Part shown: positions 31,626 to 63,464 of the stretch, one piece after another
Position numbering within the stretch: position 1 is the first letter of the stretch
Layout: every line of letters starts with the position of its first letter
From: Macrostomum hystrix
Lineage: Eukaryota; Animalia; Platyhelminthes
Assembly (NCBI GenBank): GCA_950097015.1
Contig: CATNEN010000024.1
Span: 62,001 to 126,000, forward strand
DNA: 64,000 nucleotides
Direction: 5' to 3'
The notes under the pieces: model-generated
Databases searched by the model: none
Seen by the model: only the letters and a program-made list of their open reading frames with translations
Told to the model about the DNA's origin: nothing
Position numbers and translations under genes: made by a program

Positions 31626-34600
31626 ATGCTGCTCTGTCGCGTGCGGCTGCAGTTCATCAGCGCAGCTGCCAGTCGGACTAGCCGACAGCTAAGCAGCTCT
31701 CTGGTTAGCTCGGCAACAATAACTGACTCAACTGATGAGTTTCAATTCGGCAAGCTGGCCCGTCAAAACAAAGGCAATCGCCGATTAGAGGGCAAACAGC
31801 AACGACAAGCTACGGCGAGGGCGTCATTAGCTGCCTCGGGGCCCATGTCAACGCCTAGCCAAAGGCCCGGATCCATCGACCGCTTCGGATCCGACGATAG
31901 CGGCCGATTCGAATTCGGCGCCCTGGCTCGCACCAGCAGCCTGATTGACGCCGATCCGGAGATGGCCCGCTTCGACATGGATCTCAGCCTGGAGGAGGCC
32001 GCTGACGCAATGTCGGACCAGCCGGACGCTACGGCAATCTTAGACGATGACGATCGACCCGATCATAGGCCGTTGGCGCGCGTCGGACGAAAACACGACG
32101 AAGCCTGGTATCTGCGGCGCATCGACAAGCTGGCCGAGGCGGGCGACACTGTCGGCATTGTGCGCCTGCTGCATCGAGATATGATTGGAGAGGATCGCTA
32201 CCTGCCCACTAGGCGGATTCTGCACTCCGTGATGCGTCATCTGGCCTCGGTTGGCGCCTACGAAGAGGCCAAGGCTGCGCTCAACAGGTGAGAATCCGAA
32301 CAGCTTTTGCAACAGGTGACGACTGAAACGCTTCTCTGACAACTGAAGCGCTTCTCTGACAACTGAAGCGCTTCTCTGGCAACTGAAACGCTTCTCTGAC
32401 AACTGAAGTGCTTCTCTGACAACTGAAGCGCTTCTCTGGCAACTGAAGCGCTTCTCTGACAACTGAAACGCTTCTCTCATTCAATCGCTTCTCTCATTCA
32501 ATCGCTTCTCTCATTCAATCGCTTCTCTCATTCAATCGCTTCTCTAACAATTCGAGCCCTTCTCTAACTCTAACTCTAAAGCCGCCTTCAAGAGAACATC
32601 AACATCGTTCATGTGACCCAACTCAACTGCAAGCTAATTAAAAAGTGCCGCTAGTTATTTTAGAACCCTCTTTTAACACACGTCTAGGTGCCGTTCGGCC
32701 GGCCTCGAAGCAAACTATGTAACTCATTGTCACTACCTGCGCGCGCTGTCAAATGCCTCCTGCTTTGACGGCAAACCGGATCGTTACGCTGGCGAACTGG
32801 CTTGTCGCTATTATCACTCTCTGCTAGATGATGCATCAGCGCAGTCCGAGTTACTACATCAATACGTGTACTACTTTGCTGTGCTAGCCTGCGCCAGAAA
32901 TGGAATGGTGCAAGAGGCACTTAAGGTCTGTTGATGCTCGCTGTTTTTACTCCCTATCTCCTATTGACAATAATCTATAATCTGAATGTATAATCCACCG
33001 ATTATAGATATTCGACGACTCAGTTAACCTGGCCCAGCTTCATCCGCCGCCAAAGATGCTGGACGCCCTGCTGCACGCGGCCTACACCGACAAGACTAAT
33101 GGCAGCGCCATCGCCCTGCTGGTTTGGCGACGCTTTCGTCTGGCGTTTGGCAGTAGCCTTGACGCCTATCACTATTATCGGCTGATCAGGTGTGCGCCTT
33201 GCCCGTGTTTTGACACATTAGTGTGAATTTCATGCACCTGCGCATTGTAATAAAACTGTATGCTTGTGACGCTAACTTCAATAAACCTCCGCTAACTTCA
33301 ATAAACCTCCGCTAACTTCAGTAAAGAATAAACATCCGCTAACTTCAATTAACATCATATAACATCAATAAACCTCCACTAACTTCAATAAACATCCACT
33401 AACTTCAATAAACATCCGCTAACATCAATAAACATCCGCTAACTTCAATAAACATCCACTAACTTCAATAAACATCCACTAACTTCAATAAACATCCGCT
33501 AACTTCAATAAACATCCGCTAACTTTAATAAACATCCGCTAACTTTAATAAACATCCGCTAACTTTAATAAACATCCGCTAACTTCAATTAACATCCGCT
33601 AACTTCAATTAACATCCGCTAACTGAGTAAACCTCAGTTAACTTTAGTAAAGAATAAACATCAGCTAACTTCAATAAACATCCGCTAACATCAATAAACA
33701 TCCGCTAACTTCAATAAACATCCACTAACTTCAATAAACATCCGCTAACTTCAATAAACATCCGCTAACTTTAATAAACATCCGCTAACTTTAATAAACA
33801 TCCGCTAACTTCAATAAACATCCGCTAACTTCAATTAACATCCGCTAACTGAGTAAACCTCAGTTAACTTCAGTAAAGAATAAACATCATCTAACTTCAA
33901 TAAACATCCACTAACTTCAATAAACATCCGCTAACTTTAATAAACATCCGCTAACTTCAATAAACATCCGCTAACTTCAATAAACATCCGCTAACTTTAA
34001 TAAACATCCGCTAACTTTAATAAACATCCGCTAACTTCAATAAACATCCGCTAACTTCAATAAACCTCCGCTAACTTCAGTCTTCAATAAACATCCGCCA
34101 ATCCGCCAATCCTCTGACCCAGATGCCTTCGAGGCTGCGGCATCGGCCAGCCGAGCCTGATGGCCGCTGCCGAGGCGTCCGCCGGACCGCCTGTCAAAGC
34201 CGCTCTGCCGTCTTACGATCAGCTAGGAGGCGATGGTCGCACCCCCGGCGACTACAAAGGAGCAGACGCGGCGCTGCGCCGCCTACAGGACAACTGGTCA
34301 GCCCAGTTGAACACTCAGAAGGCTCCAAAGCTAGTGGGCTCGACAGGCCCCAAGGTCGTCTCTGAGCAGTTGCCATGGGAAACGCCAGAGTCAACGTCCT
34401 CATATTTGCAAGTCCCGGCTCAGCCGTCGCAGCCGGAGCCGGACTTCTCTCTTCCAGCGCAGCCGCCTGTGGCACTGGCGTTGAGCTGCCCCGTCAATCT
34501 TCTGCGCCCGCGTCAGCCGCTGCCAATCCTGCCAGATTCGCAAAATGCTTTCCGGTTGCCATGGCAACGCCTGACCCTAGTCGGCGGCTTAGCCGGCCTG

Positions 34601-35326
34601 CTGGAATCGATGCAGGCTGACAGAGCCAAGGCGACTCCGGCGCTGGCCCTGGAACTGTTGCAGCTGCTGCCGCCACTACCCGAGGCTGAGCAGACCATCT
34701 GGCGCTTCTGTCGCAGCCGCGGCTTCCTCCGAGCCTCCACGCCAGGCGGTGGCGTCGTATTCTACAATGCCCTGCTGCGCTACCGGGTGCGCAACCGTCT
34801 GGAGCACGCCGATGTGCTGGACGAGCTGCGATCCAGCGGACTGCGGCCCGACCGCGACACCTACGCCGCACTGGCAGGCGCGTGCCGCGAACAGCGCGAA
34901 GCCGAACGCCTCCTAGCCGACATGGCGCGCGACTCGGCCAGGCCAGACCAGCTGGTGTTCTACGCCATGCTGACTGCCGCTCAGCCCGGCGACCTGGCCT
35001 ACCGGACCTGGCTGGTGCGCCGCATGGCCGGCTTTGATGTGCCGCCCAGCCCGGCCATTGTGCGCTTGCTGGAGACCGACCTAGCCAGGCACCGGGCCAG
35101 CTTGTCTAAGCAAGACAGCTCTGCCGGATCGTCGGCACACGGCCTGTCGCTGGCCTCTCAATCGGCTTCTGTGAGTCCGGTGGATTCGGCCGATTATCAG
35201 CTGTTCCGGTCGGCCTACGAATCCTGGCTGAAGGCCAACAAGCTGTTCCAGCCCATTAATTCCATTAAATCTGAGCGAATGCGGCTCAAGCATGTCCGAC
35301 TGAAGTCTTTGAAAATGGCCAGTTAG
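31626..35326 (+). CDS. PTCD1: Pentatricopeptide repeat protein PTCD1-like (mitochondrial), about 761 aa; exons 31626-32287, 32688-32925, 33008-33189, 34123-35326
   Basis: Arg/Ser-rich, acid-free N-terminal presequence. WYLRRIDKL...LHRDMIGEDRYLP, AYTDKTNGSAIALLVWRRF, RGCGIGQP and FYNALLR...GLRPDRDTYAALAGAC follow the PTCD1 motif order. Three GT-AG introns give one 2286-nt frame with consistent phases (2,0,2). Confidence 0.85.
32316..32545. repeat. Intronic minisatellite: 20-bp GACAACTGAAGCGCTTCTCT then 17-bp CATTCAATCGCTTCTCT
   Basis: Direct tandem copies begin about 30 nt after the PTCD1 intron 1 donor. Both unit types share CGCTTCTCT. Confidence 0.92.
33272..34098. repeat. Intronic 20-bp minisatellite AACATCCGCTAACTTCAATA
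   Basis: About 40 copies fill PTCD1 intron 3 and end about 25 nt before the acceptor. Confidence 0.95.
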
Positions 35327-40995: not shown

Positions 40996-41829
40996 ATGGC
41001 CATTGTAGGTTTTTTTGTACATGAAAGCATGATAAACATTGTATAACATCTTTTGAATTCCAATTTAAAACACAAGTTGCAGCAGGAAGTGGCTCAAAGT
41101 GGCATCCTTGAGGCCCAGCTGGGCCGGGGAGGGCCTGGCCAGGTGCAGCAGCAGCAGCAGTCTCATGAAGACCGCAGCCGCACCAATCTAATCATAAACT
41201 ATTTGCCGCAGACATTCGACACTGAGGATCTGCGCGCCTTATTTGAAAAGGCCGGGCCGATCCGGACACACAAGGTTGTGCGCGACAAGCAGACTGGCGC
41301 CTCGCTCTGCTATGGCTTCGTTGACTTCCTGTTTCCCGAGCACGCCGAGAAGGCCATCGGCGAGTTTCATGGCATGAGGCTGGGCAACAAGAAGCTGCGC
41401 GTTGCCTACGCGGCCACCGGCAGCAGCTCCTGCACCGGCTTTGTTGGTCCCGATGGCTCGCCGCTGCCACTGCCGACCATGCCGCCTCGTGCCGAGCGTC
41501 ACAGCGGCGGTGCCGGCTCCGGTGTCGGCAATGGGGGCAGCTTCATCGGCGGCGGTGGCGGCCTCTGCGGCTCAGGCAGCGGCGGTTCCGCGCTGCCGTT
41601 GCGCAATCCCGGCAACCTGTACGTGTCCGGCATTCCGCGCAGCTGGACCGAAGCCGATCTGAACGCGCTATTCTCCAGATTTGGCAAGCTGGTTCAGATC
41701 CGCGTGCTGACAGATCCCAACAGCGGCCTGTCCAAAGGAGTCGGCTTCGTCACCTTCGATGACAAGGGCAACGCCGAGAGGGCCATAATTGAAACTAACG
41801 GGCTGCAGGTAGGCAAATGCGGGGCTTGA

Positions 41830-41863
<34 letters not shown>

Positions 41864-44800
41864 TTCATTCCTGCAATTTCCAAAGTGGCGTGCAACTAAT
41901 AACCACCCAGGTGACTGTCCCTGTGTTACTTTGGCTTTACTCTACTGTTGCCTCACAGTCGCTAGGCTGTAATTATCCTATTTTTGGGGGATTTTATGGC
42001 GTTTAAACCGCTAGAGGGACTCAGATAAGATAACGATCCACGCGACGATTTTAGGGCGCGCTTAGAGAGCGATTAGCATCTGCTTCCCAAATCTTTCTAG
42101 CAGCTAAACTATGCCAGCTAACACACGGTTTGACAAATTTATATGCCTTGCCAACTAAACAGAGAACGAATTTAATAGACGACATCGGGCCGGATCAACA
42201 TAGAGGACTAAAAACAGAGGATAGATGAGACGTAGGAGAGATGAGTAAGGTGAGAGATAATACCAGGGACAGATAAGGCAGTAAAGACAGGGGAGAAATG
42301 GGAAATGGTCATGGAAGGTGAGATATGAGAGAGATTAGGAAAGATTAGATAGGAGACGAGAAATTAGGTTCGAGAGGTGAGACCGGAGAGGTTAGACATG
42401 AGAGATTGAATAAGAAAGTTGAGATAGGATGGACGCAGTTGCCCGACTCCTGATCTGATCCAACCCAATCTTCACCGTCTATTCAACTTTTTTAAAGAAT
42501 AATTCCGCAATGAGTTCTTTACTCTAGTAAATATTAGAATAGTGTGTGCGTCATCGCCTAGTACAGTAATCACTATTTATAGACCAATCTAGATGGGATG
42601 GAGAGAGAGTGTGGCTGGGTGGGCTTTTGTTGCCCCTCCGTTCGATCAATAGACCCCAGTTGCCTCCCTTTGCTATGCCATCCACCGCCGTGCAATTTTC
42701 GTGTCTCCTTCTCTGCCCTCTCTCTTCGTAGTTGAAGGCGTATGTCAATGCCTCTCAGACTTAAATTGAGTAACCAGACTAAACCCAACCCAGCTTAAGC
42801 TTTCCTGCAACACTGACTCATTGTACTTAGGCGCATCATTGTTAGTGGGTGGACGCCTAGATGAAGTAGCCAACACGCACAAAAGAAGTTTCCAGTACGT
42901 TTCTGGTTTGTTGAAAATCTTTTACAAGCTTTGGTTGTTCGTCTGTACTGTAAGAAGCGGTCATTATTGTTGAGATTCCATTGTTCGCGCTAGGCTTGTC
43001 TGTCTAGCCTAAATTATCTAATAGGTTGGCATTGTGAGTGCGCCTGCTTTCCCACGCGAGTTCATAGTTAAATGCGCGACATGATTTTAACTTTTTTCCT
43101 CTCCTAAAAGAAGATAGACGAACAAGATGACCGATATTAAGCAGAGTAGAGTAGTGTGCTCAATGTGAAGCCTGGGAGAAATTCACGCGATGAGACAGTG
43201 CTCAGCATGTGCCAAGCACAATACAGTATTGTATTGTTTCCTGCTGAACCATACAAATGTGATTATTAATGTGTCTGTCACTTCTGGATGTCTAATACTC
43301 TTTCAGAATTGGTCAGCACCCAATAAAAAATTAACTATTACGGTTTTATAGTAGACACTGAAGCACTGGGTCTCAGGGTTTTATAGTACACTGAAGCACT
43401 GGGTCTCAGGGTTTTATAGTACACTGAAGCACTGGGTCTCAGGGTTTTATAGTACACTGAAGCACTGGGTCTCAGGGTTTTATAGTACACTGAAGCACTG
43501 GGTCTCAGGGTTTTATAGTACACTGAAGCACTGGGTCTCAGGGTTTTATAGTACACTGAAGCACTGGGTCTCAGGGTTTTATAGTACACTGAAGCACTGG
43601 GTCTCAGGGTTTTATAGTACACTGAAGCACTGGGTCTCAGGGGTTTGTTTTACCCGACCAACCTCCTCAGGGCCCAGAATGGCCGGCTCCGCTGCTGGTG
43701 AAATTCGCCGAGGATGGCTCGGCCAGGGCCCGCTCCGGACCGCGCCACGCTGGGCTGTCAGCTTCGTTCAACCTGCCGCTGGACACCGGGCGTCAGGGCG
43801 GCTCCGGCGCCTGCCGACTGAGCGCCAGCCTGTGCGGCCCGTCCAGCTCAGCCATGAACGGATCTTCGGGCTTCAGCTCCGGCGGGTGAGCACTTGAGGC
43901 TGCATTTTTGAATTTTATGTTTGTTTTTACCTGCGCGGATATTGCCTTACCTGAGATTATCCAGCGCGGAGATTGTCTCACCTGAGATTATCCAGCGCGG
44001 AGATTGTCTCACCTGAGATTATCCAGCGCGGAGATTGTCTCACCTGAGATTATCCAGCGCGGAGATTGTCTCACCTGAGATTATCCAGCGCGGAGATTGC
44101 CTCACCTGAGATTATCCAGCGCGGAGATTGCCTCACCTGAGATTATCCAGCGCGGAGATTGCCTCACCTGAGATTATCCAGCGCGGAGATTGCCTCACCT
44201 GAGATTATCCAGCGCGGAGGTTGTCTCACCTGAGATTATCCAGCGCGGAGATTGTCTCACCTGAGATTATCCAGCGCGGAGATTGTCTCACCTGAGATTA
44301 TCGAGCGCTGTGGTGGTCTCACGTGAGATTATCCCTCCAAGAGATTTTCTTCCCTTAGTTACTGCAATAAAAGAAATTATTCTAAATGAAGTTTTTTTCT
44401 CTTTAGTTTTCCCATAGAAAGTGTTAGAAATTTTGTTTTGTTATTTTAGCTTCTGAGTTCTTTAAAATCAATGCTCAATTGAGTACATTTGGCGGCTTAC
44501 TTCAAAGAGTTGCTGGGGTCAATTTAGAAAACAGAAAAAGGCACAACTGCAATAAAAAGCGCAGCTGTGTGATAAGATTCAGGTGACTTGTAAAATTAGA
44601 TTTTTTTATTACAATCTAAATCTTGCTCACACAGAATTATTATTATAGGTGAGTAAGTTAAATAGACAATACAATTTACTATCCTTCAGTTGAGCACTGT
44701 GCCCAACACATGAGGGACTCATAGTAATATCTTTTTGGACTCAGTGAATAAAAGCTGATTAAAATCTTGCAAGTAGTGTTTGCGCTTCCAAACTGCTTAT

Positions 44801-47800
44801 GAAATAGGGCTCTGCAGCTATCGCCATTTCGTGTTTACGCGCTTCGTCAGTTTATAATTGTGCCGTGAGCCAGAGTTTAAATAATACAAGTTGTGTAGGA
44901 ATGCTATTTATTGTTAGAATCTATATAGCATAGCACAGGTTGCTAATTTTCTTACTCCGGCCGGAAATTGCTTTGCATGTGGGCTCCGAACGGATTGAGA
45001 AAGATTTCTATCGCTTATGGAGGTCATTTTGGTCCACGAACAGTTTTGCTTGCTGTTTGACTATTTGTGTAGATTGCTAGAGAAATTCAGGCATAATTCT
45101 AATAGCAATTATAAGGGGGTCATATTTGAAATGATTAGACAATTAAACTTAATAAAAGCTGCATTTCAGTTAGTTAGTGGCGCATGTACTAATTACATGA
45201 TGGATAAACAAATGTACTTTTATCCAATTAACCGCTTGTTAAAGTAGCGTTTTTTATTTTAGGAAATAAAGCTGCCCTCGATACCGTAGCTCTGTCCTAC
45301 CTATAGAATTGAGCCTATAGTTGAGTAGCTACATGCTCTCCCTGAGAAACTACCTCAGTTGATTCCGTTCCGAAATATTTTATAGTGCTTTTTCTGTTTC
45401 TTGCAGGTTAAAGCAAGGGTCTGGATTTCTAAGTAATTAATTATCTTTCGAGCATTTTTTTGCGAAATACACATTTAATAAAAAATGTAAAATGATCCCT
45501 TTCGTTTTGTTTAGCTTAGTGTCTTTAAATTAAAAGTGTATTTGAATATATAGCTTGCATTTTTTAGTTTATCACAGTGCCCAGGGGTCAATTATTTGCA
45601 TGGGTTTCTAAAAACATCACTATCTATGACACTGACAGTAGTCTAAAGTCATTATCTATGGCTGGAGTCTAAAGTAATTATCTATGGCTGGAGTCTCAAG
45701 TCATTATCTATGGCTGGAGTCTAAATCATGATCTATGGCTGGAGTCTCAAGTCATTATCTATGGCTGGAGTCTCAAGTCATTATCTATGGCTGGAGTCTA
45801 AATCATGATCTATGGCTGGAGTCTCAAGTCATTATCTATGGCTGGAGTCTCAAGTCATTATCTATGGATGGAGTCTCAAGTCATTATCTATGGCTGGAGT
45901 CTCCAGTCATTATCTATGGCTGGAGTCTCAAGTCATTATCTATGGCTGGATTCTAAAGTCATTATCTATGGCTGGAGTCTAAATCATGTTCTATGGCTGG
46001 AGTCTAAATCATGATCTATGGCTGGAGTCTAAAGTAATTATCTATGGCTGGAGTCTAAAGTAATCTATGGCTGGAGTCTAAAGTCATTATCTATGGCTTG
46101 AGTCTAAAGTAATTATCTATGGCTGTAGTCTAAAACCATTATCTGTGGCTAGTCTAAAGTAGTTATCAATGACAGGTGTCTAAGTAATTATCTATGACAG
46201 GTGTCTCAAGTAATTATGTGTCAGGTTTTTTAAGTAATTATTTGTGACAATAAAGTAATCATCTATGGCAGGTGTCAAATTATATATTTATGGCAGGTGT
46301 CTAAAGTAGTTATCAGATTTATTAAGAATCTTATTTGAAAAGAGCATTCATTCTCTTCCGCATTGGTTCCTTATCAGATTCGGTCTAAGCCGACTACTCG
46401 ACTCTGACAGTCCCACCGGTGGCGGCGGCGGCGGCTTCGGCTTTGGCGGCACGCACGCTGGCATTGAAGAGATGGTGGACAGTTTGCTAATGCTGAACGC
46501 TCTGGGCACGCAGAACGCCTTTCGCACCCTGACTGGCGGCGCCAGTAACGGCGTCGGACTGGGCAGTATCGGCACCGGCCACCGGCCGCCCGGCCACAAG
46601 GAGATCACCTCCGACCTGGACGTGTCGCTCTCCAGCAACGGCTCCAGCCTTGATTCGCCGCCGCACGACGCCCTGACTGCCCTGTCCCAGCTGGGCCTGC
46701 TGGACCCGGAATTGGCCGCTGCAGCTTCGGCCGGCGTGGCGCCCGCTCCGGCGCCATTGCACATCCGCACGCCGCTAATTGAGAGCCGACCGCTGGCCCG
46801 GGCACTCGGCATCAAAGGCTGCCGTGTGTGGATCAAACTGGAGAACTGTCAGCCAACTGGCTCCGTCTGTCTGCGTGGCATGGCCAACGCTGTGCGACGC
46901 GCCGCCGAGAGGGGTTTCACACACGTGAGTGTCATAGTTATTTGATTCCCACAGTTCTTTGATCTTGCCGCCAGGATACCCTAATTAGTTGTTTGATGTT
47001 TCCACCATGCTTCTAACTGGTTCTTAGATTTAGCTGCCGCTTATCTAGCCGGTCTTTATCTTGCTGCCGCATGTCTAATCGGTTCTTTGATCTTACCGAC
47101 GAACTTTTAATCGGTACTTTGATCTTGCCCCCACACTTCTAACCGGTTATTTTATCTTGCCGCCACGACGATTCCCTAATTAGTTTTTTTATGTTTCCAC
47201 CATGCTTCTAACCGGTTCTTAGAGTTTGCCGCCAATTTTCTAGCCGGTTTTTATTTTACCGCCGTACTTGTAACCGGTTCGATGATCTTACCGACGCATT
47301 TAAACCGGTTATTTCATCTTGCTTCCACACTTCTAACCGTTTCTTTGATCTTGCCGCCCATTTTCTAACCGGCTGTTTGATCTTAGTGCCGCACTTCAAA
47401 CCGGTTATTTCATCTTGCTTCCACACTTCTAACCGTTTCTTTGATCTTGCCGCCCATTTTCTAACCGGCTGTTTGATCTTAGCGCCGCACTTCAAACCGG
47501 TTATTTCACCTTGCTGCCACAATTCTATCCGTTTCTTTGATCTGGCCACCACACTTCCACCAGTTCTTTGATCTTGCCGCCTCACTTCCCACCAGTTCTT
47601 TGATATTGCCGCCTCACTTCTAACCGTTTATGTTATTTAGCCGCTTATTTTCTAACCGGCTGATTGATCTTACCGCCGCACTTCGAATCGGTACTTTCAT
47701 CTTGCCGCCGCATTTCCCAACAGTTATTTATCTTTCGAACGTATCGCTCTCTTTTTTTATAATTTCTCTGGGATTTATTTAAACTTTTCTCGCCAAAAGA

Positions 47801-49251
47801 AACCTTGTCTGTTAAATAGGCTTTAAATATTTTTTCTGCTTTCCATGACTTTAAAACAAATTTCTGCGTCATCGTTCGTGGGTAAACGGGGCAGTACCTA
47901 GAACGCGACAAGTTTAGAAATGTATCCTCAATAATAACTAGCTAACAAAATGGTTCATTCGACCAGCGAATTGTTCAACAGGCTTGCAACGATAAAAAGC
48001 AGAGCTGCAAATTGCAACGAACGCAAATATAAATTCATTTTGATCCGCTTTGCGGACATTGTGAACAGAAATGTTTTTTTTAACAAGCGAATTTTGTGCG
48101 AAAAAAAACGATTTAGAGATGCTGAAGCTGAATTCCTTCGCATTCATTCCTTGCTGTTAACGTGCTTTAACAATTTTAGCTAGAATTCTAGTTGCATATC
48201 TTTTTATCAAGCTTTCTATTTAAGCTATTTCGTCAATTGTATGCAATGTGCCTCTGCTACATATTTTTATAGAATTTTAGTCCATTTCTGCGTGAATATT
48301 TTTATTCCGAATCATGAGAATAGATATCCCCATTTTGGGAGAATCTGAGTTCAAATGAATTCTTTTATTAGGGATAATATTTATTGCTCTAAATTTTACT
48401 GTTATCCCAAAATGACACCTGCACCTCCAGGTCGTGACAAGCAGCAGCAGCAGTGGCAACTGCGGCCTCGCCTGCGCATACGCGGCTGCCCGTCTGGGCC
48501 TTCAGTGCACTGTGGTGCTGCCCGACCCGCTGGCATGCGGCCCCGGCTCTGGCTCCGCTGCTAGCGGCTGCTTAGCCGAAGAGGTCCGCGCGCGCATCGC
48601 CGACGAAGGCGCCCAGGTTGTGCTGGCTGGCTCGGCCTGGCCGGAGGCGCACGCCAGAGCCGAAGTCCTGGCCAATCAGCTGGGCCACTGCGCCTGCCTG
48701 CTGCATCCCTTCGATAGCGAGGACGTCTGGGCCGGCTACAGCGGCCTAGTCGACGAAGTGGCCGAGGCGCTCAATGGCGAACAGCCGGACGCTGTCGTCC
48801 TGCCCGTGTCCGGAGGCGGCCTGCTGTCTGGCATTGTAGCCGGCCTGTGGCGCTACGGGTGGGTGACAACGCCGATTATTGCTGCCGAAACACGCGGCGT
48901 TGATCATCTGGCCGCGGCTCTGGCTGGCGGCGGCGGCGGTGGCGGCCGTCCTTGCCAGCGCGCTCTGGAGGCGGCAGGTGAGCAGCCGCTACACGCGGTG
49001 GCTAGCAGCCAGGAGGAGGCAGCCAGGGCCTGTGTGAGCTTCCTTGGCCAGCATCAGCAGCTGACGGAGCCAGTCTGCGGAGCCGCCTTGGCCGCTGTGT
49101 ACAACCGACAGTTTGGGCCGCAGCAGCTGCTGACCAGGCCTCACCCAGCTAACATCATCGTGCTCGTCACTGGTGGCCGCTCCGTGGGGGTTCAGCAACT
49201 GTTTGAACTGGCTGGAGGCTCCCCGCAGCCGCCATCACCACTGCCACTGCC

Positions 49252-49286
<35 letters not shown>

Positions 49287-49291
49287 CTTAG
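40996..49291 (+). CDS. Predicted ELAV-type RRM1-RRM2 / serine dehydratase-like fusion protein, about 785 aa; exons 40996-41004, 41083-41808, 43671-43885, 46378-46924, 48431-49291
   Basis: All introns are GT-AG and the summed length of 2358 nt is one open frame. The critical junction GG|gtgagc (43885) to ttatcag|A (46378) is phase 2/2. The first 9-nt exon is tentative. Confidence 0.62.
41083..43885 (+). CDS. elav: ELAV/Hu/Sex-lethal family RRM1 and RRM2 coding exons
   Basis: RTNLIINYLPQ...VVRDKQTGASLCYGFVDF...KKLRVAYA; NLYVSGIP...LFSRFG...SGLSKGVGFVTFD...NGLQ|GPEWPAPLLVKFA. These are diagnostic ELAV RRM signatures. Confidence 0.92.
43345..43641. repeat. 33-bp minisatellite TAGTACACTGAAGCACTGGGTCTCAGGGTTTTA
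   Basis: About 9 near-perfect copies end about 30 nt upstream of the exon at 43671. Confidence 0.95.
43946..44310. repeat. 31-bp minisatellite CCTGAGATTATCCAGCGCGGAGATTGTCTCA
   Basis: About 12 copies start about 60 nt after the donor at 43886. Confidence 0.95.
45645..46315. repeat. 26-bp minisatellite AAGTCATTATCTATGGCTGGAGTCTC, decaying to the right
   Basis: Tandem copies with variants; the array ends about 60 nt before the acceptor at 46377. Confidence 0.9.
46378..49291 (+). CDS. L-serine/threonine dehydratase (SDS/SDSL, fold-type II PLP)-like domain lacking the Schiff-base lysine
   Basis: LHIRTPLIES...KLENCQPTGSVCLRG; SSGNCGLACAYAAARLG; HPFDSEDVWAGY; PDAVVLPVSGGGLLSGIVAGL; IIAAETRG; TEPVCGAALAAVY; VTGG. 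Motif order is the same as in SDS. Confidence 0.9.
46950..47720. repeat. Degenerate 31-32-bp minisatellite (CTAACCGGTTCTTTGATCTTGCCGCC core)
   Basis: Recurrent aaccgg...gatcttgccgc modules start about 25 nt after the donor at 46925. Confidence 0.8.
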
Positions 49292-49394
49292 GAGGCGATA
49301 TGTTTAGAAATAGTAAAATAACTCTGGTTGCTGAAGAGCTACTCTATTTTAACAATGGCTAGAAAATTTGGATCAACATTTCACGATGAACTAA

Positions 49395-56700: not shown

Positions 56701-57359
56701 AAATTCTCACCTTCAGATTTAGATTAAGATTTAAACCTTTATATTAGTGCTTCAAATCAGAGGATCAGATTGAAAATTTCCACGTTCCGCATTTCCCGAT
56801 TTGAAATCAGAACACCATTTTTTCCTTTAAACTAAGCTCACACTTTCTTAGAATCGATAAGCAGTTTACTTTTGCTCATCTAGTCGGGCCCGCATATACC
56901 AGCTCGCAGATAGCAAGTAATAACAAATTAGATTTAGTCATCGGTCAGGTCAATTTGGAGCTAATTTGGTTCGCTAAATTTCAATTTATCTCAAAACAAG
57001 CAGGAAGGAGGGCTGTCCATTGCGCAATCCTAGAATTGCTGATGTGTAGTAAAAATACTTGAAGTGCTTCCCAAATTGAGTTGGGATATTCTAGAAAATG
57101 GGACAGAATTCCCAGGAAACTCAAATGGTGACAGGATCGCTAATGAAGTGAGCAACTTTTGGAGGCCAGCTCCAGATTCAATGCTAAACCGCGGCGCGAT
57201 TTGAGGATAAACTTGTTGCCTATGGGATGAAAAATAATTTTGTCACTGCACTGCTGGGCGAGAAAATCTTATTTGCTTATTTGCTTTCAACAAGTTTGCG
57301 TACAGAACCTTGAAGTGTCCCAAAATGAGCGAGATTAACTAGAGGCTTTGGTGAGACAA

Positions 57360-58735
<1,376 letters not shown>

Positions 58736-58807
58736 TACGTATGTAATCAATCCAAGCCACTCAATTTTCGCCAATTGTGTAAAGCAGTGCACATTTCTGG
58801 TATGATT

Positions 58808-59325
58808 GTGCAGTAACCTGTGAGTTCGGGTTAAAGTTGATGCTGTGCAGTAACCTGTGAGTTCGGGCCAAAGTTGATGCTGTGCAGTAACCTGTGAGTT
58901 CGGGCCAAAGTTGATGCTGTGCAGTAACCTGTGAGTTCGGGCCAAAGTTGATCCTGTGCAGTAACCTGTGAGTTCGGGCCAAAGTTGATCCTGTGCAGTA
59001 ACCTGTGAGTTCGGGTTAAAGTTGATCCTGTGCAGTAACCTGTGAGTTCGGGCCAAAGTTGATGCTGTGCAGTAACCTGTGAGTTCGGGTTAAAGTTGAT
59101 CCTGTGCAGTAACCTGTGAGTTCGGGCCAAAGTTGATGCTGTGCAGTAACCTGTGAGTTCGGGTTAAAGTTGATCCTGTGCAGTAACCTGTGAGTTCGGG
59201 CCAAAGTTGATGCTGTGCAGTAACCTGTGAGTTCGGGCCAAAGTTGATGCTGTGCAGTAATCTGTGAGTTCGGGCCAAAGTTGATCCTGTGCAGTAACCT
59301 GTGAGTTCGGGCCAAAGTTGATGCA
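58808..59325. repeat. 37-bp minisatellite GTGCAGTAACCTGTGAGTTCGGGCCAAAGTTGATGCT
   Basis: About 14 contiguous copies with no spacers. Confidence 0.96.
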
Positions 59326-60957
59326 ATCGCTTTAAACAGCTGCACTAAAAACGTGCGGTCTACAAAAATTTCTGCTAGTCGAGTCTTGTTCCAACCATGC
59401 GGGGGGTCCTGTGACAGACAATGAGAACTGCAGAGTAGATGATAAATGTTTTAATTGAGTGAAGTGGGTTTGGCCGGGTTCTCACTATGTGCTCAGTGAA
59501 AACGGCTAGCATTTTTTCTCAGGTTGTTGGCAAATAAAATGATCTGTTCTTCTTTCTGATACATTTCTTTTGCACATAGCAACTATCTATATTTGTGGCA
59601 TTTCGTATTTTCTTGATTCTATTGCTCGAAGCACGCCTCAATGTTGACACTGATAAAACATGAACACTCGCGCCTATAGACAGGCCAGATCAGACGCGAT
59701 TGCTTCTGCTAAAAGGCAGAAAGCTTCAGGTAAATTTAAGAGAAACTATTCTACTTTCTAAATAAAAAACCAATTTGAAAATGGGTCTAATTGTATAGGA
59801 CCATTATGCCGCTCGTTTTAATACCAATGGGAATTTCCCCCTGACAATTTTTGTGGTTCTTCTGAAACAAAAATCAAGTCGCCAGCCCTTCAGACCGTCG
59901 AGACATTCAATGTTTCTGGCCGAAGGTCCGATTTTTCCCATAAGAACTAGTGTATTTCATGCACCCCTGTACACGAATTTGCACTTCGACCTTCAAAATT
60001 TATCAGCACGTCACCCGAATGTGCCTGTATCATCTCCGTCTTCGGTGGTCACTCAACTTTATCTAGACGGAGCTGCTGGACCTTCAGCAAGTAATAGTCG
60101 AGTTTAGGCCAATCCATAGCCAGCTGGAAGCACTCTGCTGACGTGCTTCCAGTACGGATGCCACGGTGCTAACGGCGTCGGGGTGGTGACTGATTGGTTG
60201 ACAGACTAGACGAGGGTCCTGTGCTGCAACTTGGAGGTTGGCTTGGTAGTTCTACTGTTAATCTGTTCTGATAGTTGCACAAAGCTCCGTGGTTGATATA
60301 TGAATTGCATCATCACTGCTGACTGATGAGCTGAATATTTCTGTTGTTGGGGCGGCCAGAACCCGGGGCAGTGTCCTGGAGTAAAATAATCCAAGGAAGA
60401 AATCTGAAATCAGATAAGCTGTTTGGCGCTTTGAAAAGATTTCCAAAAAAATTTAGAAAGGGGTGGAGAAAGACGAATGAGAAAGCTGAAATTCTTGCAT
60501 TTTTTATTTCTCATTGTGTAGCGCCATTGCGTCTGCTTTTACCTTTAGTTGTTATCTCGAAGCGAAATCGCAAATAGCAATATTTTGTTTTCCGCCAACC
60601 CGGGCGACAAATTTATGATTATAAGCAATACTTAATTATACTCGTAGTTGCTAGGCCAAGCAGTAACCTATGTAGACAAGCATCTGAACCAGTTTGTTTG
60701 AAATCGTAACAAATTTTTGAACAAAAAAACAGCCAGAGATCAGATCGTGAAGTCTTATATGCTTGGTTTTTCTAAACCAATGTAAATATATCGGCTTAGT
60801 GTGATGTAGCTGCAGCATCCTACTATGGATTTTTGTGGCTTACAGAAAATAAACATTCAGTTCACAACATTTAACGCATAAATACGAAAATAAAAGCGGA
60901 ATATAAGTTTCGTCTGCAGCGTTTGTTTATGATGAGGGTTAGGGTTAGGAAGGTGAG

Positions 60958-62745
60958 GTGTAGAAAGAGCTAGAGAGGTGTAGAAAGAGCTAGAGAGGGG
61001 TAGAAAGAGCTAGAGAAGGGTTGAAAGAGCTAGAGAGGTGTAGAAAGAGCTAGAGAGATGTAGAAAGAGCTAGAGAGGGGGTAGAAAGAGCTAGAGAGGT
61101 GTAGAAAGAGCTAGAGAGGGGTAGAAAGAGCTAGAGAGGGGTAGAAAGAGCTAGCTAGAGAGGTATAGAAAGAGCTAGAGAGTGGTTGAAAGAGCTAGAG
61201 AGGGGTAGAAAGAGCTAGAGAGGGGTAGAAAGAGCTAGAGAGGGGTGGAAAGAGCTAGAGAGGGGGTAGAAAGAGCTAGAGAGGTGTAGAAAGAGCTAGA
61301 GAGGGGGTAGAAAGAGCTAGAGAGGGGTAGAAAGAGCTAGAGAAGGGTTGAAAGAGCTAGAGAGGTGTAGAAAGAGCTAGAGAGGTGTAGAAAGAGCTAG
61401 AGAGGTGTAGAAAGAGCTAGAGAGGGGTAGAAAGAGCTAGAGAGGGGTAGAAAGAGCTAGCTAGAGAGGTGTAGAAAGAGCTAGCTAGAGAGGTATAGAA
61501 AGAGCTAGAGAGTGGTTGAAAGAGCTAGAGAGGGGTAGAAAGAGCTAGAGAGGGGTAGAAAGAGCTAGAGAGGGGTGGAAAGAGCTAGAGAGGGGGTAGA
61601 AAGAGCTAGAGAGGTGTAGAAAGAGCTAGAGAGGGGGTAGAAAGAGCTAGAGAGGGGTAGAAAGAGCTAGAGAAGGGTTGAAAGAGCTAGAGAGGTGTAG
61701 AAAGAGCTAGAGAGGTGTAGAAAGAGCTAGAGAGGTGTAGAAAGAGCTAGAGAGGGGTAGAAAGAGCTAGAGAGGGGTAGAAAGAGCTAGCTAGAGAGGT
61801 GTAGAAAGAGCTAGAGAGAGGTTGAAAGAGCTAGAGAGGGGTAGAAAGAGCTAGAGAGGGGTAGAAAGAGCTAGAGAGGGGTGGAAAGAGCTAGAGAGGG
61901 GGTAGAAAGAGCTAGAGAGGTGTAGAAAGAGCTAGAGAGGTGTAGAAAGAGCTAGAGAGGTGTAGAAAGAGCTAGAGAGGTGTAGAAAGAGCTAGAGAGG
62001 TGTAGAAAGAGCTAGAGAGGTGTAGAAAGAGCTAGAGAGGTGTAGAAAGAGCTAGAGAGGTGTAGAAAGAGCTAGAGAGGTGTAGAAAGAGCTAGAGAGG
62101 GGTAGAAAGAGCTAGAGAGGGGTAGAAAGAGCTAGCTAGAGAGGTGTAGAAAGAGCTAGAGAGAGGTTGAAAGAGCTAGAGAGGGGTAGAAAGAGCTAGA
62201 GAGGGGTAGAAAGAGCTAGAGAGGGGTGGAAAGAGCTAGAGAGGGGGTAGAAAGAGCTAGAGAGGTGTAGAAAGAGCTAGAGATGGGGTAGAAAGAGCTA
62301 GAGAGGGGTAGAAAGAGCTAGAGAGGTGTAGAAAGAGCTAGAGAGGGGTAGAAAGAGCTAGAGAGGGTAGAAAGAGCTAGCTATAGAGGTGTAGAAAGAG
62401 CTAGAGAGAGGTTGAAAGAGCTAGAGAGGGGTAGAAAGAGCTAGAGAGGTGTAGAAAGAGCTAGAGAGGGGGTAGAAAGAGCTAGAGAGGTGTAGAAAGA
62501 GCTAGAGAGGGGGTAGAAAGAGCTAGAGAGGGGTAGAAAGAGCTAGAGAGGGGTAGAAAGAGCTAGAGAGGTGTAGAAAGAGCTAGAAAGGGATTGAAAG
62601 AGCTAGAGAGAAGTTGAAAGAGCCAGAGAGGTGTAGAAAGAGCTAGAGAGGTGTAGAAAGAGCTAGAGCGGTGTAGAAAGAGCTAGAGAGGTGGTAAGAA
62701 AGAGCTAGAGAGAGGTAGAAAGTGCTAGAGAGGGGCAGAAAAGGC
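60958..62745. repeat. 20-bp purine-rich satellite TAGAAAGAGCTAGAGAGG(T/G)G
   Basis: About 88 copies. The plus strand is strongly A/G-biased, and longer variant blocks are repeated. Confidence 0.97.
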
Positions 62746-63464
62746 TAGAAAGGGTTAATTTTATACCTCTCGTGAGTTAGAGAGGGTAGAAATAGTTTGA
62801 CTGGGGTTAAGAGAGTAAGAGAAAAGAAGGATAATTAGAGTAAACGAAAGAGAGGGTAGAATTAATGATAATTCAAATGAATCTAATTGTGTAATTTATT
62901 GATTTCATGCACAAAAAAGCAGATTTCATTGACCCTAGTTTAAACTGGTATTCAATTTGTTAAAGTGCTTTGCTTCCGTGCCCGTTCGCCCTGATCCCAT
63001 AATCCCACTACTGTCTTTGTCAATCAGATTCTCCCTGTTCCCAACTGGGATCTAATATCTAATAGCCATGCGCCGAATGTGGAAGCAGAAGTGGCCACTT
63101 ATGATATTTCAAACTGGCACAGTTCGTTTTCATTCGTGTTTTTTCATGGGTTTTCCTGCGTCTTCTGGGGGCAGCAGCTTGGAGGTTGCACGAGTAAATA
63201 TTTAGTCAAGCAGCGGGTAGCAATGTCAGCCTTCAGCAATGCCCTAAGCAGGTTTTATGGTTTGGACAAGTTGCTCTGGTTTGACCCTTGGTCAGTTAAG
63301 ATCTGGGACAATAGTAGATCAAGGCCGAGATTGATGGGGTCAATATGAAGTTTCTATTAATTCCGATATTGCGCAAAGCTTTTGTGCATTATTGTTCCAG
63401 CAAAGGGACATTGTTGTCTAACTGATAACACGATAAGAATGGCAGAAATCATAAATGGAATGCG

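What the first reader, a model, noticed from the sequence alone, without database searches (positions are those of the whole stretch)
40996..49291. ELAV-type RNA-binding protein apparently fused to a catalytically dead serine dehydratase domain in place of RRM3
Seen: RRM1-RRM2 exons end at a phase-2 donor (43885). The next strong acceptor with open coding sequence (46377) is also phase 2. It leads through a Gly-rich linker of about 125 residues (FGLSRLLDSDSPTGGGGGGFGFGG...) straight into an SDS-like domain. No RRM3 exon is visible. Established: ELAV/Hu proteins normally end in a hinge plus RRM3, and I know of no characterised ELAV-PLP-enzyme fusion. Inference: this may be an RNA regulator carrying an amino-acid- or B6-related sensing or oligomerisation module, coupling metabolism to mRNA splicing or stability.
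Basis: partly seen in the sequence, partly recalled or inferred. Interest (0 to 1): 0.88.

Follow-up and report, generated by a model that had tools for sequence, protein, structure and literature searches.

The report
ELAV-like protein fused to dead dehydratase
This is one real flatworm gene that joins two ELAV-type RNA-binding domains to a serine-dehydratase-fold domain lacking its catalytic lysine; the same architecture occurs across parasitic and free-living flatworms, where databases and at least one paper treat it as an enzyme.

Summary
Four exons on the + strand (about 41083-41808, 43671-43885, 46378-46924, 48431-49291) encode RRM1, RRM2, a roughly 180-residue hinge and a serine-dehydratase-like PALP domain.

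- **Junction:** Intron-free contigs from three public runs each carry the disputed 43885|46378 GT..AG junction. The same contig also holds the end of exon A and the 46924|48431 junction.
- **Orthologue:** The deposited Macrostomum lignano protein BOX15_Mlig010810g1 is 78% identical. It has the same four-exon layout and the same upstream PPR gene.
- **Distribution:** RRM+PALP proteins occur in about 25 trematode and cestode species. Most are named "L-serine ammonia-lyase".
- **Dead site:** The PLP lysine is Cys (TGT 46868-46870) in both Macrostomum genes. It is also lost in all cestodes seen, but kept in most trematodes.
- **Selection:** The dead domain is under purifying selection (dN/dS 0.16). 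Its cofactor-pocket loops stay more conserved than the rest of the domain.
- **RRM3:** No RRM3 exists in the window or in any family member checked.

The sensing or oligomerisation role is untested. I found no paper describing the fusion. Echinococcus "EmTD" (EmuJ_001093200) belongs to this family and lacks the lysine. The start codon is unresolved. The scan also noted a second copy of this fusion elsewhere in the same genome (s1-084963, not tested).

The parts
41083..41808 (+). Exon A: N-terminal Gln-rich stretch, RRM1, a 65-residue Gly-rich inter-RRM insert, and most of RRM2. It ends in phase 0 at CAG|gtaggc. The 5' boundary is inferred (acceptor ttgcag|CAGGAA).
   Evidence: Pfam RRM_1 x2. 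Splice contexts. Nucleotide similarity to the M. lignano locus starts at 41076. The loose end of the transcript contigs equals the end of this exon.
41182..41415 (+). RRM1, ELAV/Hu type (RNP2 LIINYL, RNP1 CYGFVDF).
   Evidence: Best solved relatives are HuD, HuR and HuC (E 3e-38), ahead of Sxl (5e-29). The TNLI(I/V)NYLPQ signature is shared with EXC-7 and ELAV-like 2/3/4. dN/dS is 0.008.
41611..41808 (+). RRM2, first part (RNP2 LYVSGI, RNP1 GVGFVTF). It continues in exon B to 43715 (...LLVKFAED).
   Evidence: dN/dS is 0.04.
41809..43670 (+). Intron 1 (GT..AG), holding a (TG)16 run at 41831-41862 and a 33-nt x 9 tandem array at 43342-43646.
   Evidence: The contig loose end before 43668 shows exon A joined to exon B.
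43671..43885 (+). Exon B: the end of RRM2 plus the first part of the hinge. It ends in phase 2 at GGCGG|gtgagc.
   Evidence: The hinge is highly conserved against M. lignano.
43886..46377 (+). Intron 2 (GT..AG, 2,492 nt), the disputed junction. It holds a 31-nt x 13 array (43933-44334) and a 26/77-nt x 22 array (45640-46217).
   Evidence: The joint 43884->46377 (cut +1) is carried by one contig in each of X2, X3 and X4, with 217 nt on the shorter side. No contig coverage lies inside it except two 61-nt pieces within a repeat in X3. Arrays.
46378..46924 (+). Exon C: about 125 residues of hinge (Gly run and conserved motifs such as GIEEMVDSLLMLNAL), then the N-terminal part of the PALP domain from about 46754. 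It ends in phase 0 at CAC|gtgagt.
46862..46879 (+). Cofactor-lysine motif reading SVCLRG. Cys (TGT 46868-46870) stands where serine dehydratases have the Schiff-base Lys, and Val where they have Phe.
   Evidence: Aligned to SFKIRG of rat SDH and of human SDS and SDSL. M. lignano has the same residues. No variant letters were reported here in the RNA contigs. Coordinates.
46925..48430 (+). Intron 3 (GT..AG), holding a degenerate 32/96-nt tandem array at 46954-47716.
   Evidence: The joint 46924->48431 is seen in X1, X2, X3 and X4. Array.
48431..49291 (+). Exon D: the rest of the PALP domain, comprising the Asn loop SSGNCG, the phosphate loop SGGGLL, a Gly run replacing about 12 residues at 48920-48955, and EPVCG. 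It ends with a poly-Gln tail ((CAG)n 49252-49285) and stop TAG 49289-49291.
   Evidence: Pfam PALP 1.5e-38. PDB alignments. Colinear contig 48431-49228. Coordinates.

Best explanation
**What is shown.** This is a single cis-spliced, four-exon Macrostomum gene. It is orthologous to M. lignano Mlig010810 and belongs to a flatworm-wide family. The protein has these parts:
- two ELAV/Hu-type RRMs with intact RNP motifs, separated by an unusually long Gly-rich insert;
- a roughly 180-residue hinge that is mostly disordered but strongly conserved;
- a C-terminal serine-dehydratase-fold (fold-type II PLP) domain where ELAV proteins have RRM3.

In this species the Schiff-base lysine is Cys and the neighbouring ring-stacking Phe is Val. 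The domain therefore cannot carry out PLP-lysine chemistry and is a pseudoenzyme. M. lignano keeps a separate, intact stand-alone serine dehydratase.

**What is inferred.** The protein acts as an RNA regulator through RRM1-2. The dehydratase-fold domain supplies what RRM3 and the hinge supply in ELAV, namely self-association. Solved relatives of this fold include dimeric and tetrameric threonine deaminases. The domain may also retain a small-molecule pocket (for PLP, an amino acid or a nucleotide-like ligand) that modulates this.

I put about 0.9 on the gene structure and pseudoenzyme status. I put about 0.4 on dimerisation as the main role, and about 0.2 on ligand sensing that gates RNA regulation.
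For: - **Junctions in RNA:** X2, X3 and X4 each have one contig spanning the end of exon A, then B, C and D, with GT..AG at both junctions. X1 confirms the C|D junction.
- **Frame:** The reading frame stays open across all junctions, giving a 782-aa product.
- **Orthologue:** The M. lignano NCBI protein P0001 is 779 aa with RRM_1+PALP. It has the same four exons and the same phase-2 junction, is 78% identical, and has an orthologous PPR gene upstream.
- **Selection:** dS is 0.75. dN/dS is 0.008 for RRM1, 0.04 for RRM2, 0.12 for the hinge and 0.16 for PALP.
- **Family:** RRM_1+PALP proteins occur in Paragonimus, Dicrocoelium, Opisthorchis, Clonorchis, Schistosoma spp., Heterobilharzia, Trichobilharzia, Fasciolopsis, Echinostoma, Calicophoron, Schistocephalus, Spirometra, Mesocestoides, Echinococcus, Hydatigera, Taenia and Hymenolepis. 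A 728-aa Fasciola relative aligns with them.
- **Next-best relatives:** After the fusions, the best hits to the family profile are canonical ELAVs (EXC-7, ELAV-like 2/3/4).
- **Sequence and fold:** RRM1-2 best match HuD and HuR. PALP best matches human SDSL and SDS and rat SDH. In the AF2 model of the orthologue, all three domains have pLDDT above 90, and the PALP domain scores TM 0.82-0.86 against SDS, SDH and SDSL.
- **Lysine status:** Cys in both Macrostomum genes. Leu, Val, Ala or Thr in cestodes. Lys in most trematodes.
- **Stand-alone enzyme:** M. lignano SDS P0004 has an intact SFKIRG.
- **Pocket loops:** In lysine-less members they are more conserved than the domain average (0.80 against 0.60; 0 of 5000 permutations reach this).
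- **Oligomeric relatives:** Structural hits include dimeric and tetrameric TdcB entries.
- **RRM3 and multimerisation:** RRM3 is implicated in ELAV multimerisation, as summarised in PMC2795745.
Against: - The transcript evidence consists of assembled contigs, not single long reads. Contigs drop rare isoforms, so a minor SL-trans-spliced or ELAV-only isoform cannot be excluded.
- X2, X3 and X4 all come from one study.
- No start codon has been demonstrated. Exon A has no in-frame ATG upstream of RRM1.
- Nothing here measures RNA binding, oligomerisation, ligand binding or the absence of enzyme activity.
- Pocket loops are also core structural elements, so their conservation does not prove ligand binding.
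- The 65-residue insert between RRM1 and RRM2 departs from the tight ELAV tandem and may change how RNA is bound.
- The structure model is of the 78%-identical M. lignano orthologue, not of the window protein itself.
Confidence: 0.88

Rival explanations
1. Two adjacent or operonic genes. An ELAV-like gene would end after exon B, and a separate SDS-like gene would start at 46378 by SL trans-splicing, translated from ATG 46472. The join would be an artefact or a rare read-through.
For: SL trans-splicing and operons are common in M. lignano: about 30% of genes are SL-spliced (PMC8629364). An in-frame ATG exists at 46472. A TGA follows the 43885 donor if the intron is retained. Contigs cannot exclude minor isoforms.
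Against: - A GT..AG joint at exactly 43885|46378 sits in one contig per run in three runs. These contigs also carry exon A and exon D.
- No SL-like loose end is listed at 46378, and no coverage extends past the donor in X2 and X4.
- The same junction, in the same phase, is in the M. lignano gene model.
- The residues flanking the junction and the hinge are conserved, with dN/dS 0.12.
- RRM+PALP occurs in one polypeptide in about 25 other flatworm species.
Confidence: 0.03
2. A bifunctional protein in which the C-terminal domain is still an active serine/threonine dehydratase, or another PLP enzyme using a different residue, tethered to RNA by the RRMs.
For: - Most trematode orthologues keep SFK(I/V)RG along with the Asn, phosphate and N1-contact loops, so the ancestral fusion may have been catalytic.
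- The phosphate loop and the EPxCG motif are retained in the window protein.
- Databases name the family L-serine ammonia-lyase.
Against: - In the window and in M. lignano the Schiff-base Lys is Cys and the stacking Phe is Val.
- About 12 residues of an active-site-proximal segment are replaced by a Gly run, which is modelled with low confidence.
- A separate intact SDS exists in M. lignano.
- The lysine was lost independently in cestodes, which argues that catalysis is dispensable for the family's conserved role.
Confidence: 0.05
3. A decaying conjoined gene. The fusion transcript would be real, but the C-terminal domain would be a non-functional relic on its way to loss.
For: Loss of the catalytic Lys, a Gly-run replacement and a poly-Gln tail suggest relaxed constraint on catalysis.
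Against: - The PALP domain has dN/dS 0.16 at dS 0.75, with no frameshifts or stops.
- The architecture is retained across Macrostomorpha, Trematoda and Cestoda.
- The domain is modelled as a complete, confident SDS fold.
Confidence: 0.03

Closest known systems
ELAV/Hu proteins (HuR, HuD, HuC; C. elegans EXC-7; M. lignano melav1 and melav2)
   Same: RRM1 and RRM2 are of ELAV type. They carry the TNLI(I/V)NYLPQ RNP2 signature and find their best sequence and structure matches in HuD and HuR. A hinge follows RRM2.
   Different: There is no RRM3; a serine-dehydratase-fold domain stands in its place. RRM1 and RRM2 are separated by about 65 residues instead of about 10. Melav2 is a 422-aa, three-RRM protein and so is a different gene (PMC2795745).
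Sex-lethal (Sxl)
   Same: It is an ELAV-related protein with only two RRMs. It is the second-best group of solved relatives.
   Different: Sxl has no C-terminal globular domain, and it scores lower than the Hu proteins (5e-29 against 3e-38).
L-serine dehydratase / SDS-like (human SDS 1p5j and 4h27, SDSL 2rkb, rat SDH 1pwe and 1pwh)
   Same: The fold-type II PLP fold is the same, with TM 0.82-0.86 and about 35% identity. The Asn loop, the Gly-rich phosphate loop and the Cys that contacts the pyridine N are retained.
   Different: The Schiff-base Lys is Cys and the preceding Phe is Val. About 12 residues are replaced by a Gly run. The domain is fused behind two RRMs and a long hinge.
Deposited flatworm proteins named 'L-serine ammonia-lyase' or 'serine dehydratase-like' (M. 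lignano BOX15_Mlig010810g1; Schistosoma, Opisthorchis, Echinococcus and others; EmuJ_001093200, 'EmTD')
   Same: They share the RRM-RRM-hinge-PALP architecture. The M. lignano entry is the orthologue: 78% identical, with the same exons and the same synteny.
   Different: These entries are automatic annotations as enzymes. None is described as an RNA-binding protein. Trematode members keep the lysine, and neodermatan members have a degenerate RRM2 with a large insert.
Tubulanus polymorphus (nemertean) 'serine dehydratase-like' XP_074641592.1
   Same: It is an SDS-like domain with N-terminal non-enzymatic modules in another spiralian.
   Different: The N-terminal modules are two PDZ domains, not RRMs, and the lysine is intact. 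In the tree it falls with stand-alone SDS proteins, not with the flatworm fusions.
IRP1 / cytosolic aconitase (from general knowledge, not tested here)
   Same: It is the textbook case of a metabolic-enzyme fold serving post-transcriptional regulation and reporting a metabolite or cofactor state.
   Different: IRP1 binds RNA with the enzyme fold itself and switches by Fe-S cluster loss. Here, canonical RRMs are joined to a separate dead-enzyme domain.

Membership tests
ELAV/Hu family | Tandem RRM1-RRM2 with ELAV-type RNP motifs and closest similarity to Hu proteins | tested here: met
   HuD, HuR and HuC are the top PDB sequence hits (3e-38), ahead of Sxl and PABP. Foldseek matches the RRM pair to HuR, HuD and Sxl. 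The RNP2 signature is shared with EXC-7 and ELAV2/3/4. The family profile's next-best hits are ELAVs.
ELAV/Hu family | Short linker (about 10 residues) between RRM1 and RRM2 | tested here: not met
   RRM1 ends near residue 115 and RRM2 starts near residue 175 of the exon A translation. The insert is Gly-rich, modelled as disordered in the orthologue and less constrained (dN/dS 0.22).
ELAV/Hu family | Hinge followed by a third RRM | tested here: not met
   Pfam finds no third RRM in any exon or in the family members scanned. tblastn finds no RRM-like exon elsewhere in the 64 kb window. The transcript contigs run from exon B through C and D to the stop.
L-serine dehydratase / threonine deaminase (fold-type II PLP enzymes, Pfam PALP) | PALP fold and sequence homology to SDS/SDSL | tested here: met
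   Pfam PALP. Human SDSL and SDS and rat SDH match at E 1e-44 to 1e-45 for the orthologue's domain. TM is 0.82-0.86.
L-serine dehydratase / threonine deaminase (fold-type II PLP enzymes, Pfam PALP) | Schiff-base lysine in the S-x-K-x-R-G motif | tested here: not met
   The motif reads SVCLRG, with Cys codon TGT at 46868-46870. M. lignano is the same. No variant is reported in the RNA contigs.
L-serine dehydratase / threonine deaminase (fold-type II PLP enzymes, Pfam PALP) | Gly-rich phosphate-binding loop, Asn loop and the Cys/Ser contacting the pyridine N | tested here: met
   The loops read SGGGLL, SSGNCG and EPVCG, against GGGGLL, GGNAG and EPACG. The assignment of these loops to cofactor contacts rests on my knowledge of SDS structures, not on a test here.
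L-serine dehydratase / threonine deaminase (fold-type II PLP enzymes, Pfam PALP) | PLP-dependent deamination of Ser/Thr | not testable with these tools
   This needs recombinant protein, a PLP spectrum and an activity assay.
Flatworm RRM-RRM-PALP fusion family (uncharacterised) | One polypeptide with an N-terminal ELAV-type RRM1 (EDRSRTNLIINYLPQ...), a second RRM, a long hinge and a C-terminal SDS-like domain | tested here: met
   Family alignment. The Pfam architecture PF00076+PF00291 appears in all members listed. The PALP tree places 20 fusion domains plus the M. lignano stand-alone SDS on one side of a split with 97% support.
Flatworm RRM-RRM-PALP fusion family (uncharacterised) | Orthology to M. 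lignano Mlig010810 (same exon structure and synteny) | tested here: met
   The four exons have the same boundaries and phases. The upstream PPR gene is 62% identical. Only the exons align at the DNA level.
SL-resolved operon (two genes) | Trans-spliced leader at the downstream gene's first acceptor, with no cis-splice from the upstream gene | tested here: not met
   A cis joint 43885|46378 is seen in three runs. No SL-type loose end is listed at 46378. A rare isoform is not excluded.

The most novel reading that the evidence does not exclude
The dead dehydratase domain may be a ligand sensor. Its conserved cofactor and substrate pocket would bind PLP, serine, threonine or a related metabolite without turnover. 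Binding would switch dimerisation or the availability of the RRMs. Flatworms would then couple amino-acid or vitamin-B6 status directly to mRNA splicing, stability or translation through an ELAV-derived protein. This would be an IRP1-like logic built from different parts and conserved across free-living and parasitic flatworms.
Probability: 0.17. Interest if true: 0.85.

Novelty: new variant of a known kind. Interest (0 to 1): 0.62.

Why it matters
**For RNA biology.** ELAV/Hu proteins are among the best-studied RNA regulators. Their RRM3 and hinge are central to multimerisation and target choice. A whole animal phylum has a paralogue in which RRM3 was swapped for a metabolic-enzyme fold that repeatedly lost its catalytic lysine. 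This is a natural experiment on what RRM3 does and on how pseudoenzymes are recruited into RNA regulation.

**For parasitology.** Databases name these proteins L-serine ammonia-lyase or threonine deaminase. An Echinococcus metabolism study took the family member EmuJ_001093200 as the parasite's threonine deaminase. Its qPCR primers encode FLQPTGSV and QHIVCPT, matching the lysine-less fusion protein. Metabolic reconstructions for cestodes that include this "enzyme" are probably wrong.

**Tractability.** Macrostomum has established RNAi and transgenesis, so function can be tested directly.

Tried and rejected
- **RRM3 elsewhere.** I looked for an RRM3 exon anywhere in the window, including downstream of the stop, in case the SDS exons were nested in an ELAV intron. 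tblastn with RRM1 and RRM2 found only the two known RRMs. ORF lists show nothing RRM-like.
- **Alternative ELAV endings.** The candidates were TGA 43887-89 and the "45407 exon". There is no contig coverage at 45319-45509 and none beyond the donor in X2 and X4.
- **Identity with melav1 or melav2.** Rejected. Melav2 is a 422-aa protein with three RRMs, and melav1 is described as a conventional elav-like gene (PMC2795745).
- **Start codon.** Exon A has no in-frame ATG before RRM1; the M. lignano in-frame Met is Ile here. Three options remain open:
  1. an SL-donated ATG, since the M. lignano leader ends in ATG (PMC8629364) and a splice at 41083 would be in frame;
  2. a mini-exon ATG 40997-41005 with a gtaggt donor, which is in phase but not conserved in M. 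lignano;
  3. a colinear 5' end with no ATG.

  The X2 and X3 contigs both extend 751 nt upstream of 43668, which is about 28 nt beyond 41083. That fits option 1 or 2. I could not read those letters.
- **SL RNA gene.** A search for an SL RNA gene in the window found nothing.
- **Spurious joint.** The joint 46442->48926 "with 167 letters between" and the many loose ends at 46417-46442 and 48926-48946 come from unrelated GGC-rich transcripts matching the Gly-run codons. I disregarded them.
- **Literature.** Searches for a described RRM/ELAV-serine dehydratase fusion found nothing.
- **Window protein in the database.** The window's own protein was not found in the protein collection, so I could not fetch a transcript contig for it.
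- One row of the PALP tree (Mesocestoides) was cut at the wrong motif. This was corrected and does not affect the conclusions.

Full report
**Anatomy.** The region is eukaryotic, with GC-rich exons separated by AT-rich introns full of repeats. I read four + strand exons:
- A, about 41083-41808
- B, 43671-43885
- C, 46378-46924
- D, 48431-49291

All introns are GT..AG. The exon-end phases are 0, 2 and 0, and together the exons give an open 782-codon frame ending at TAG 49289-49291. Pfam finds two RRM_1 domains in exon A (E 3e-36). It finds the two halves of a PALP domain in exon C (2.5e-10) and exon D (1.5e-38).

Public runs holding this sequence were found, and their contigs were laid on 43600-49300. 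In each of X2, X3 and X4 (one organism, one study) a single intron-free contig of 1.9-2.4 kb does three things:
- It joins 43884/5 to 46377/8 (GT..AG, 2,492 nt skipped, 217 nt on the shorter side).
- It joins 46924 to 48431.
- It continues upstream of 43668 with letters identical to the end of exon A.

X1, from a different organism label and study, confirms the C|D junction.

Coverage is zero across 44364-46273, including the proposed 45407 exon. X2 and X4 have no coverage past the 43885 donor, while X3 has two 61-nt pieces inside a tandem repeat at depth about 2. No leader-like loose end is listed at 46378.

Three caveats apply. These are assemblies rather than single molecules. Contigs hide rare isoforms. 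Eleven loose ends were not displayed.

**Independent support from relatives.** An exhaustive HMMER search with exon D returned, as by far the best hit, a 779-aa protein with the PALP domain at its C-terminus (P0001, E 2e-112). It also returned several other long proteins. Pfam shows RRM_1+PALP in P0001, P0008 and P0062.

P0001 is M. lignano BOX15_Mlig010810g1. Its locus (L001) has the same four exons with the same boundaries and phases, including the phase-2 junction. It also has the same PPR-type gene upstream, 62% identical. Only the exons align at the DNA level. The window protein is 78% identical to P0001 by BLASTP, or 85% over gap-free aligned codons. Synonymous divergence is about 0.75, so the window comes from a different Macrostomum lineage. 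That last step is inference.

Word-indexed searches with P0001 and with a family profile list RRM_1+PALP proteins in about 25 trematode and cestode species. After them come canonical ELAVs (EXC-7, ELAV-like 2/3/4). No non-flatworm RRM+PALP protein appeared. A nemertean protein has PDZ-PDZ-PALP instead.

**What the parts are.**
- **RRM1-2.** Their best solved relatives are HuD, HuR and HuC (3e-38), then Sxl. They carry the ELAV RNP2 signature.
- **PALP domain.** It aligns end to end with human SDSL and SDS and with rat SDH.
- **Model.** An AlphaFold model of the M. lignano orthologue gives pLDDT above 90 for RRM1 (28-110), RRM2 (165-243) and PALP (about 445-760). It gives disorder for the inter-RRM insert and for the hinge, apart from one weak helix at 344-355. 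Confidence is low for the Gly-run segment around 650-670.
- **Fold search.** Foldseek matches the PALP domain to SDS, SDH and SDSL at TM 0.82-0.86. It matches the RRM pair to HuR, HuD and Sxl.

**Dead or alive?**
- Serine dehydratases have S-F-K-I-R-G at the cofactor site. The window and M. lignano have S-V-C-L-R-G, with Cys codon TGT at 46868-46870.
- A segment of about 12 residues present in SDS and in the neodermatan orthologues is replaced by a Gly run.
- Across the family, most trematodes keep the lysine. All cestodes sampled have Leu, Val, Ala or Thr. One Trichobilharzia species has Glu.
- In the PALP tree the neodermatan fusions form one clade (99% support) with the cestodes nested inside it. 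Lysine loss in cestodes and in Macrostomum was therefore independent.
- M. lignano also has a stand-alone 337-aa SDS with intact SFKIRG. It sits on the fusion side of a 97%-supported split, which is consistent with the fused domain deriving from the flatworm SDS lineage.

**Is the dead domain functional?** Between the window and M. lignano, dN/dS is 0.008 for RRM1, 0.04 for RRM2, 0.12 for the hinge and 0.16 for PALP. The hinge holds long blocks that are identical between the two species. In the nine lysine-less members, the four cofactor and substrate loops are more conserved than the domain as a whole: 0.80 against 0.60, with 0 of 5000 random column sets reaching that value. This fits a retained pocket. 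These loops are also structural, however, so it is not proof.

**Mechanism.**
- **Shown:** one gene, one transcript, an ELAV-type RRM pair, an SDS fold without the lysine, and purifying selection.
- **Inferred:** the protein regulates RNA through RRM1-2. The SDS-fold domain replaces the RRM3 and hinge functions of ELAV. Chief among these is self-association: RRM3 is implicated in ELAV multimerisation (PMC2795745), and solved relatives of this fold include dimeric and tetrameric threonine deaminases.
- **More speculative:** a ligand-binding role is possible.

**Comparison with what is known.** Against the defining ELAV features, the RRM1-2 type is met. The short inter-RRM linker and RRM3 are not. 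It is therefore ELAV-derived rather than a canonical ELAV. Against serine dehydratase, the fold and loops are met and the catalytic lysine is not, so it is a pseudoenzyme.

I found no paper describing an RRM/ELAV-dehydratase fusion. The M. lignano elav paper covers different genes.

An Echinococcus study named EmuJ_001093200 as the parasite's threonine deaminase by reciprocal BLAST, with only 37-40% query cover. It found the gene barely expressed and the protein undetected. Its qPCR primers translate to FLQPTGSV and QHIVCPT, which match the lysine-less Echinococcus fusion protein P0181. The paper mentions neither RRMs nor the lysine.

**Open points.**
- The start codon is unresolved; see Tried and rejected.
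- The transcript evidence comes from contigs of essentially one study plus one further run.
- An earlier scan note reports a second RRM-SDS fusion copy on another piece of the same genome (s1-084963). I did not test it.

**Verdict.** It is not a one-off. It belongs to an uncharacterised, phylum-wide family that public databases hold under enzyme names. I rate it a new variant of a known kind, with interest about 0.6.

Noticed in passing
window 43342-43646, 43933-44334, 45640-46217, 46954-47716: Every intron of this gene carries its own minisatellite array: 33 nt x 9, 31 nt x 13, 26/77 nt x 22, and 32/96 nt x about 24. The introns do not align with the M. lignano orthologue at all.
   Followed up: partly
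window 34160-35326 (+) and upstream exons near 31900-33200: An upstream gene encodes a PPR-like protein that is 62% identical to the gene upstream of the M. lignano orthologue. Gene order is therefore conserved between the two loci.
   Followed up: partly
P0181 (Echinococcus) / EmuJ_001093200 in PMC11795093: The gene treated as Echinococcus threonine deaminase ('EmTD') is a member of this RRM-PALP family with Ala at the lysine position. The published qPCR primers translate to FLQPTGSV and QHIVCPT. The paper reports it as almost unexpressed and undetected by proteomics.
   Followed up: yes
P0005 (Tubulanus polymorphus XP_074641592.1): A nemertean 'serine dehydratase-like' protein carries two N-terminal PDZ domains and an intact lysine. 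This is a second, independent case of an SDS-like domain fused to interaction modules in a spiralian.
   Followed up: partly
P0075/P0176 (Trichobilharzia szidati) vs P0180 (T. regenti): T. szidati has Glu at the lysine position (SFEIRG), while its congener has SYKIRG. This is either a very recent loss or a sequence error.
   Followed up: no
window 46460-46504; P0001 residues 344-355; neodermatan hinge 'LELLDLLDG': The hinge holds a conserved acidic and hydrophobic stretch, GIEEMVDSLLMLNAL. It is the only predicted helix in the hinge (low confidence) and resembles a leucine-rich export or docking motif. A comparable LLDLLD block is conserved in trematodes and cestodes.
   Followed up: no
trematode orthologues, C-terminus (e.g. 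P0008, P0153): Trematode members have a long C-terminal extension ending in a conserved LNPHDLVNFSKLLA motif. Macrostomum and cestodes lack it.
   Followed up: no
window 46417-46442 and 48926-48946: The GGC-repeat codons for the Gly runs attract pieces of many unrelated, highly expressed transcripts in the read-laying. These produce a spurious 'joint' 46442->48926 and depth spikes of 500+ in X1.
   Followed up: yes
window 57000-59400 and 61000-63000: These stretches have very strong GC and AT skew (GC skew 0.6-0.78). Overlapping repeat-derived ORFs on the minus strand at 58532-59345 suggest long tandem or satellite arrays.
   Followed up: no
another piece of the same genome (scan note s1-084963): An earlier first-stage note reports a second ELAV/Sxl-type RRM pair spliced to a serine-dehydratase-like domain elsewhere in this genome. 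That would mean at least two copies of the fusion gene.
   Followed up: no
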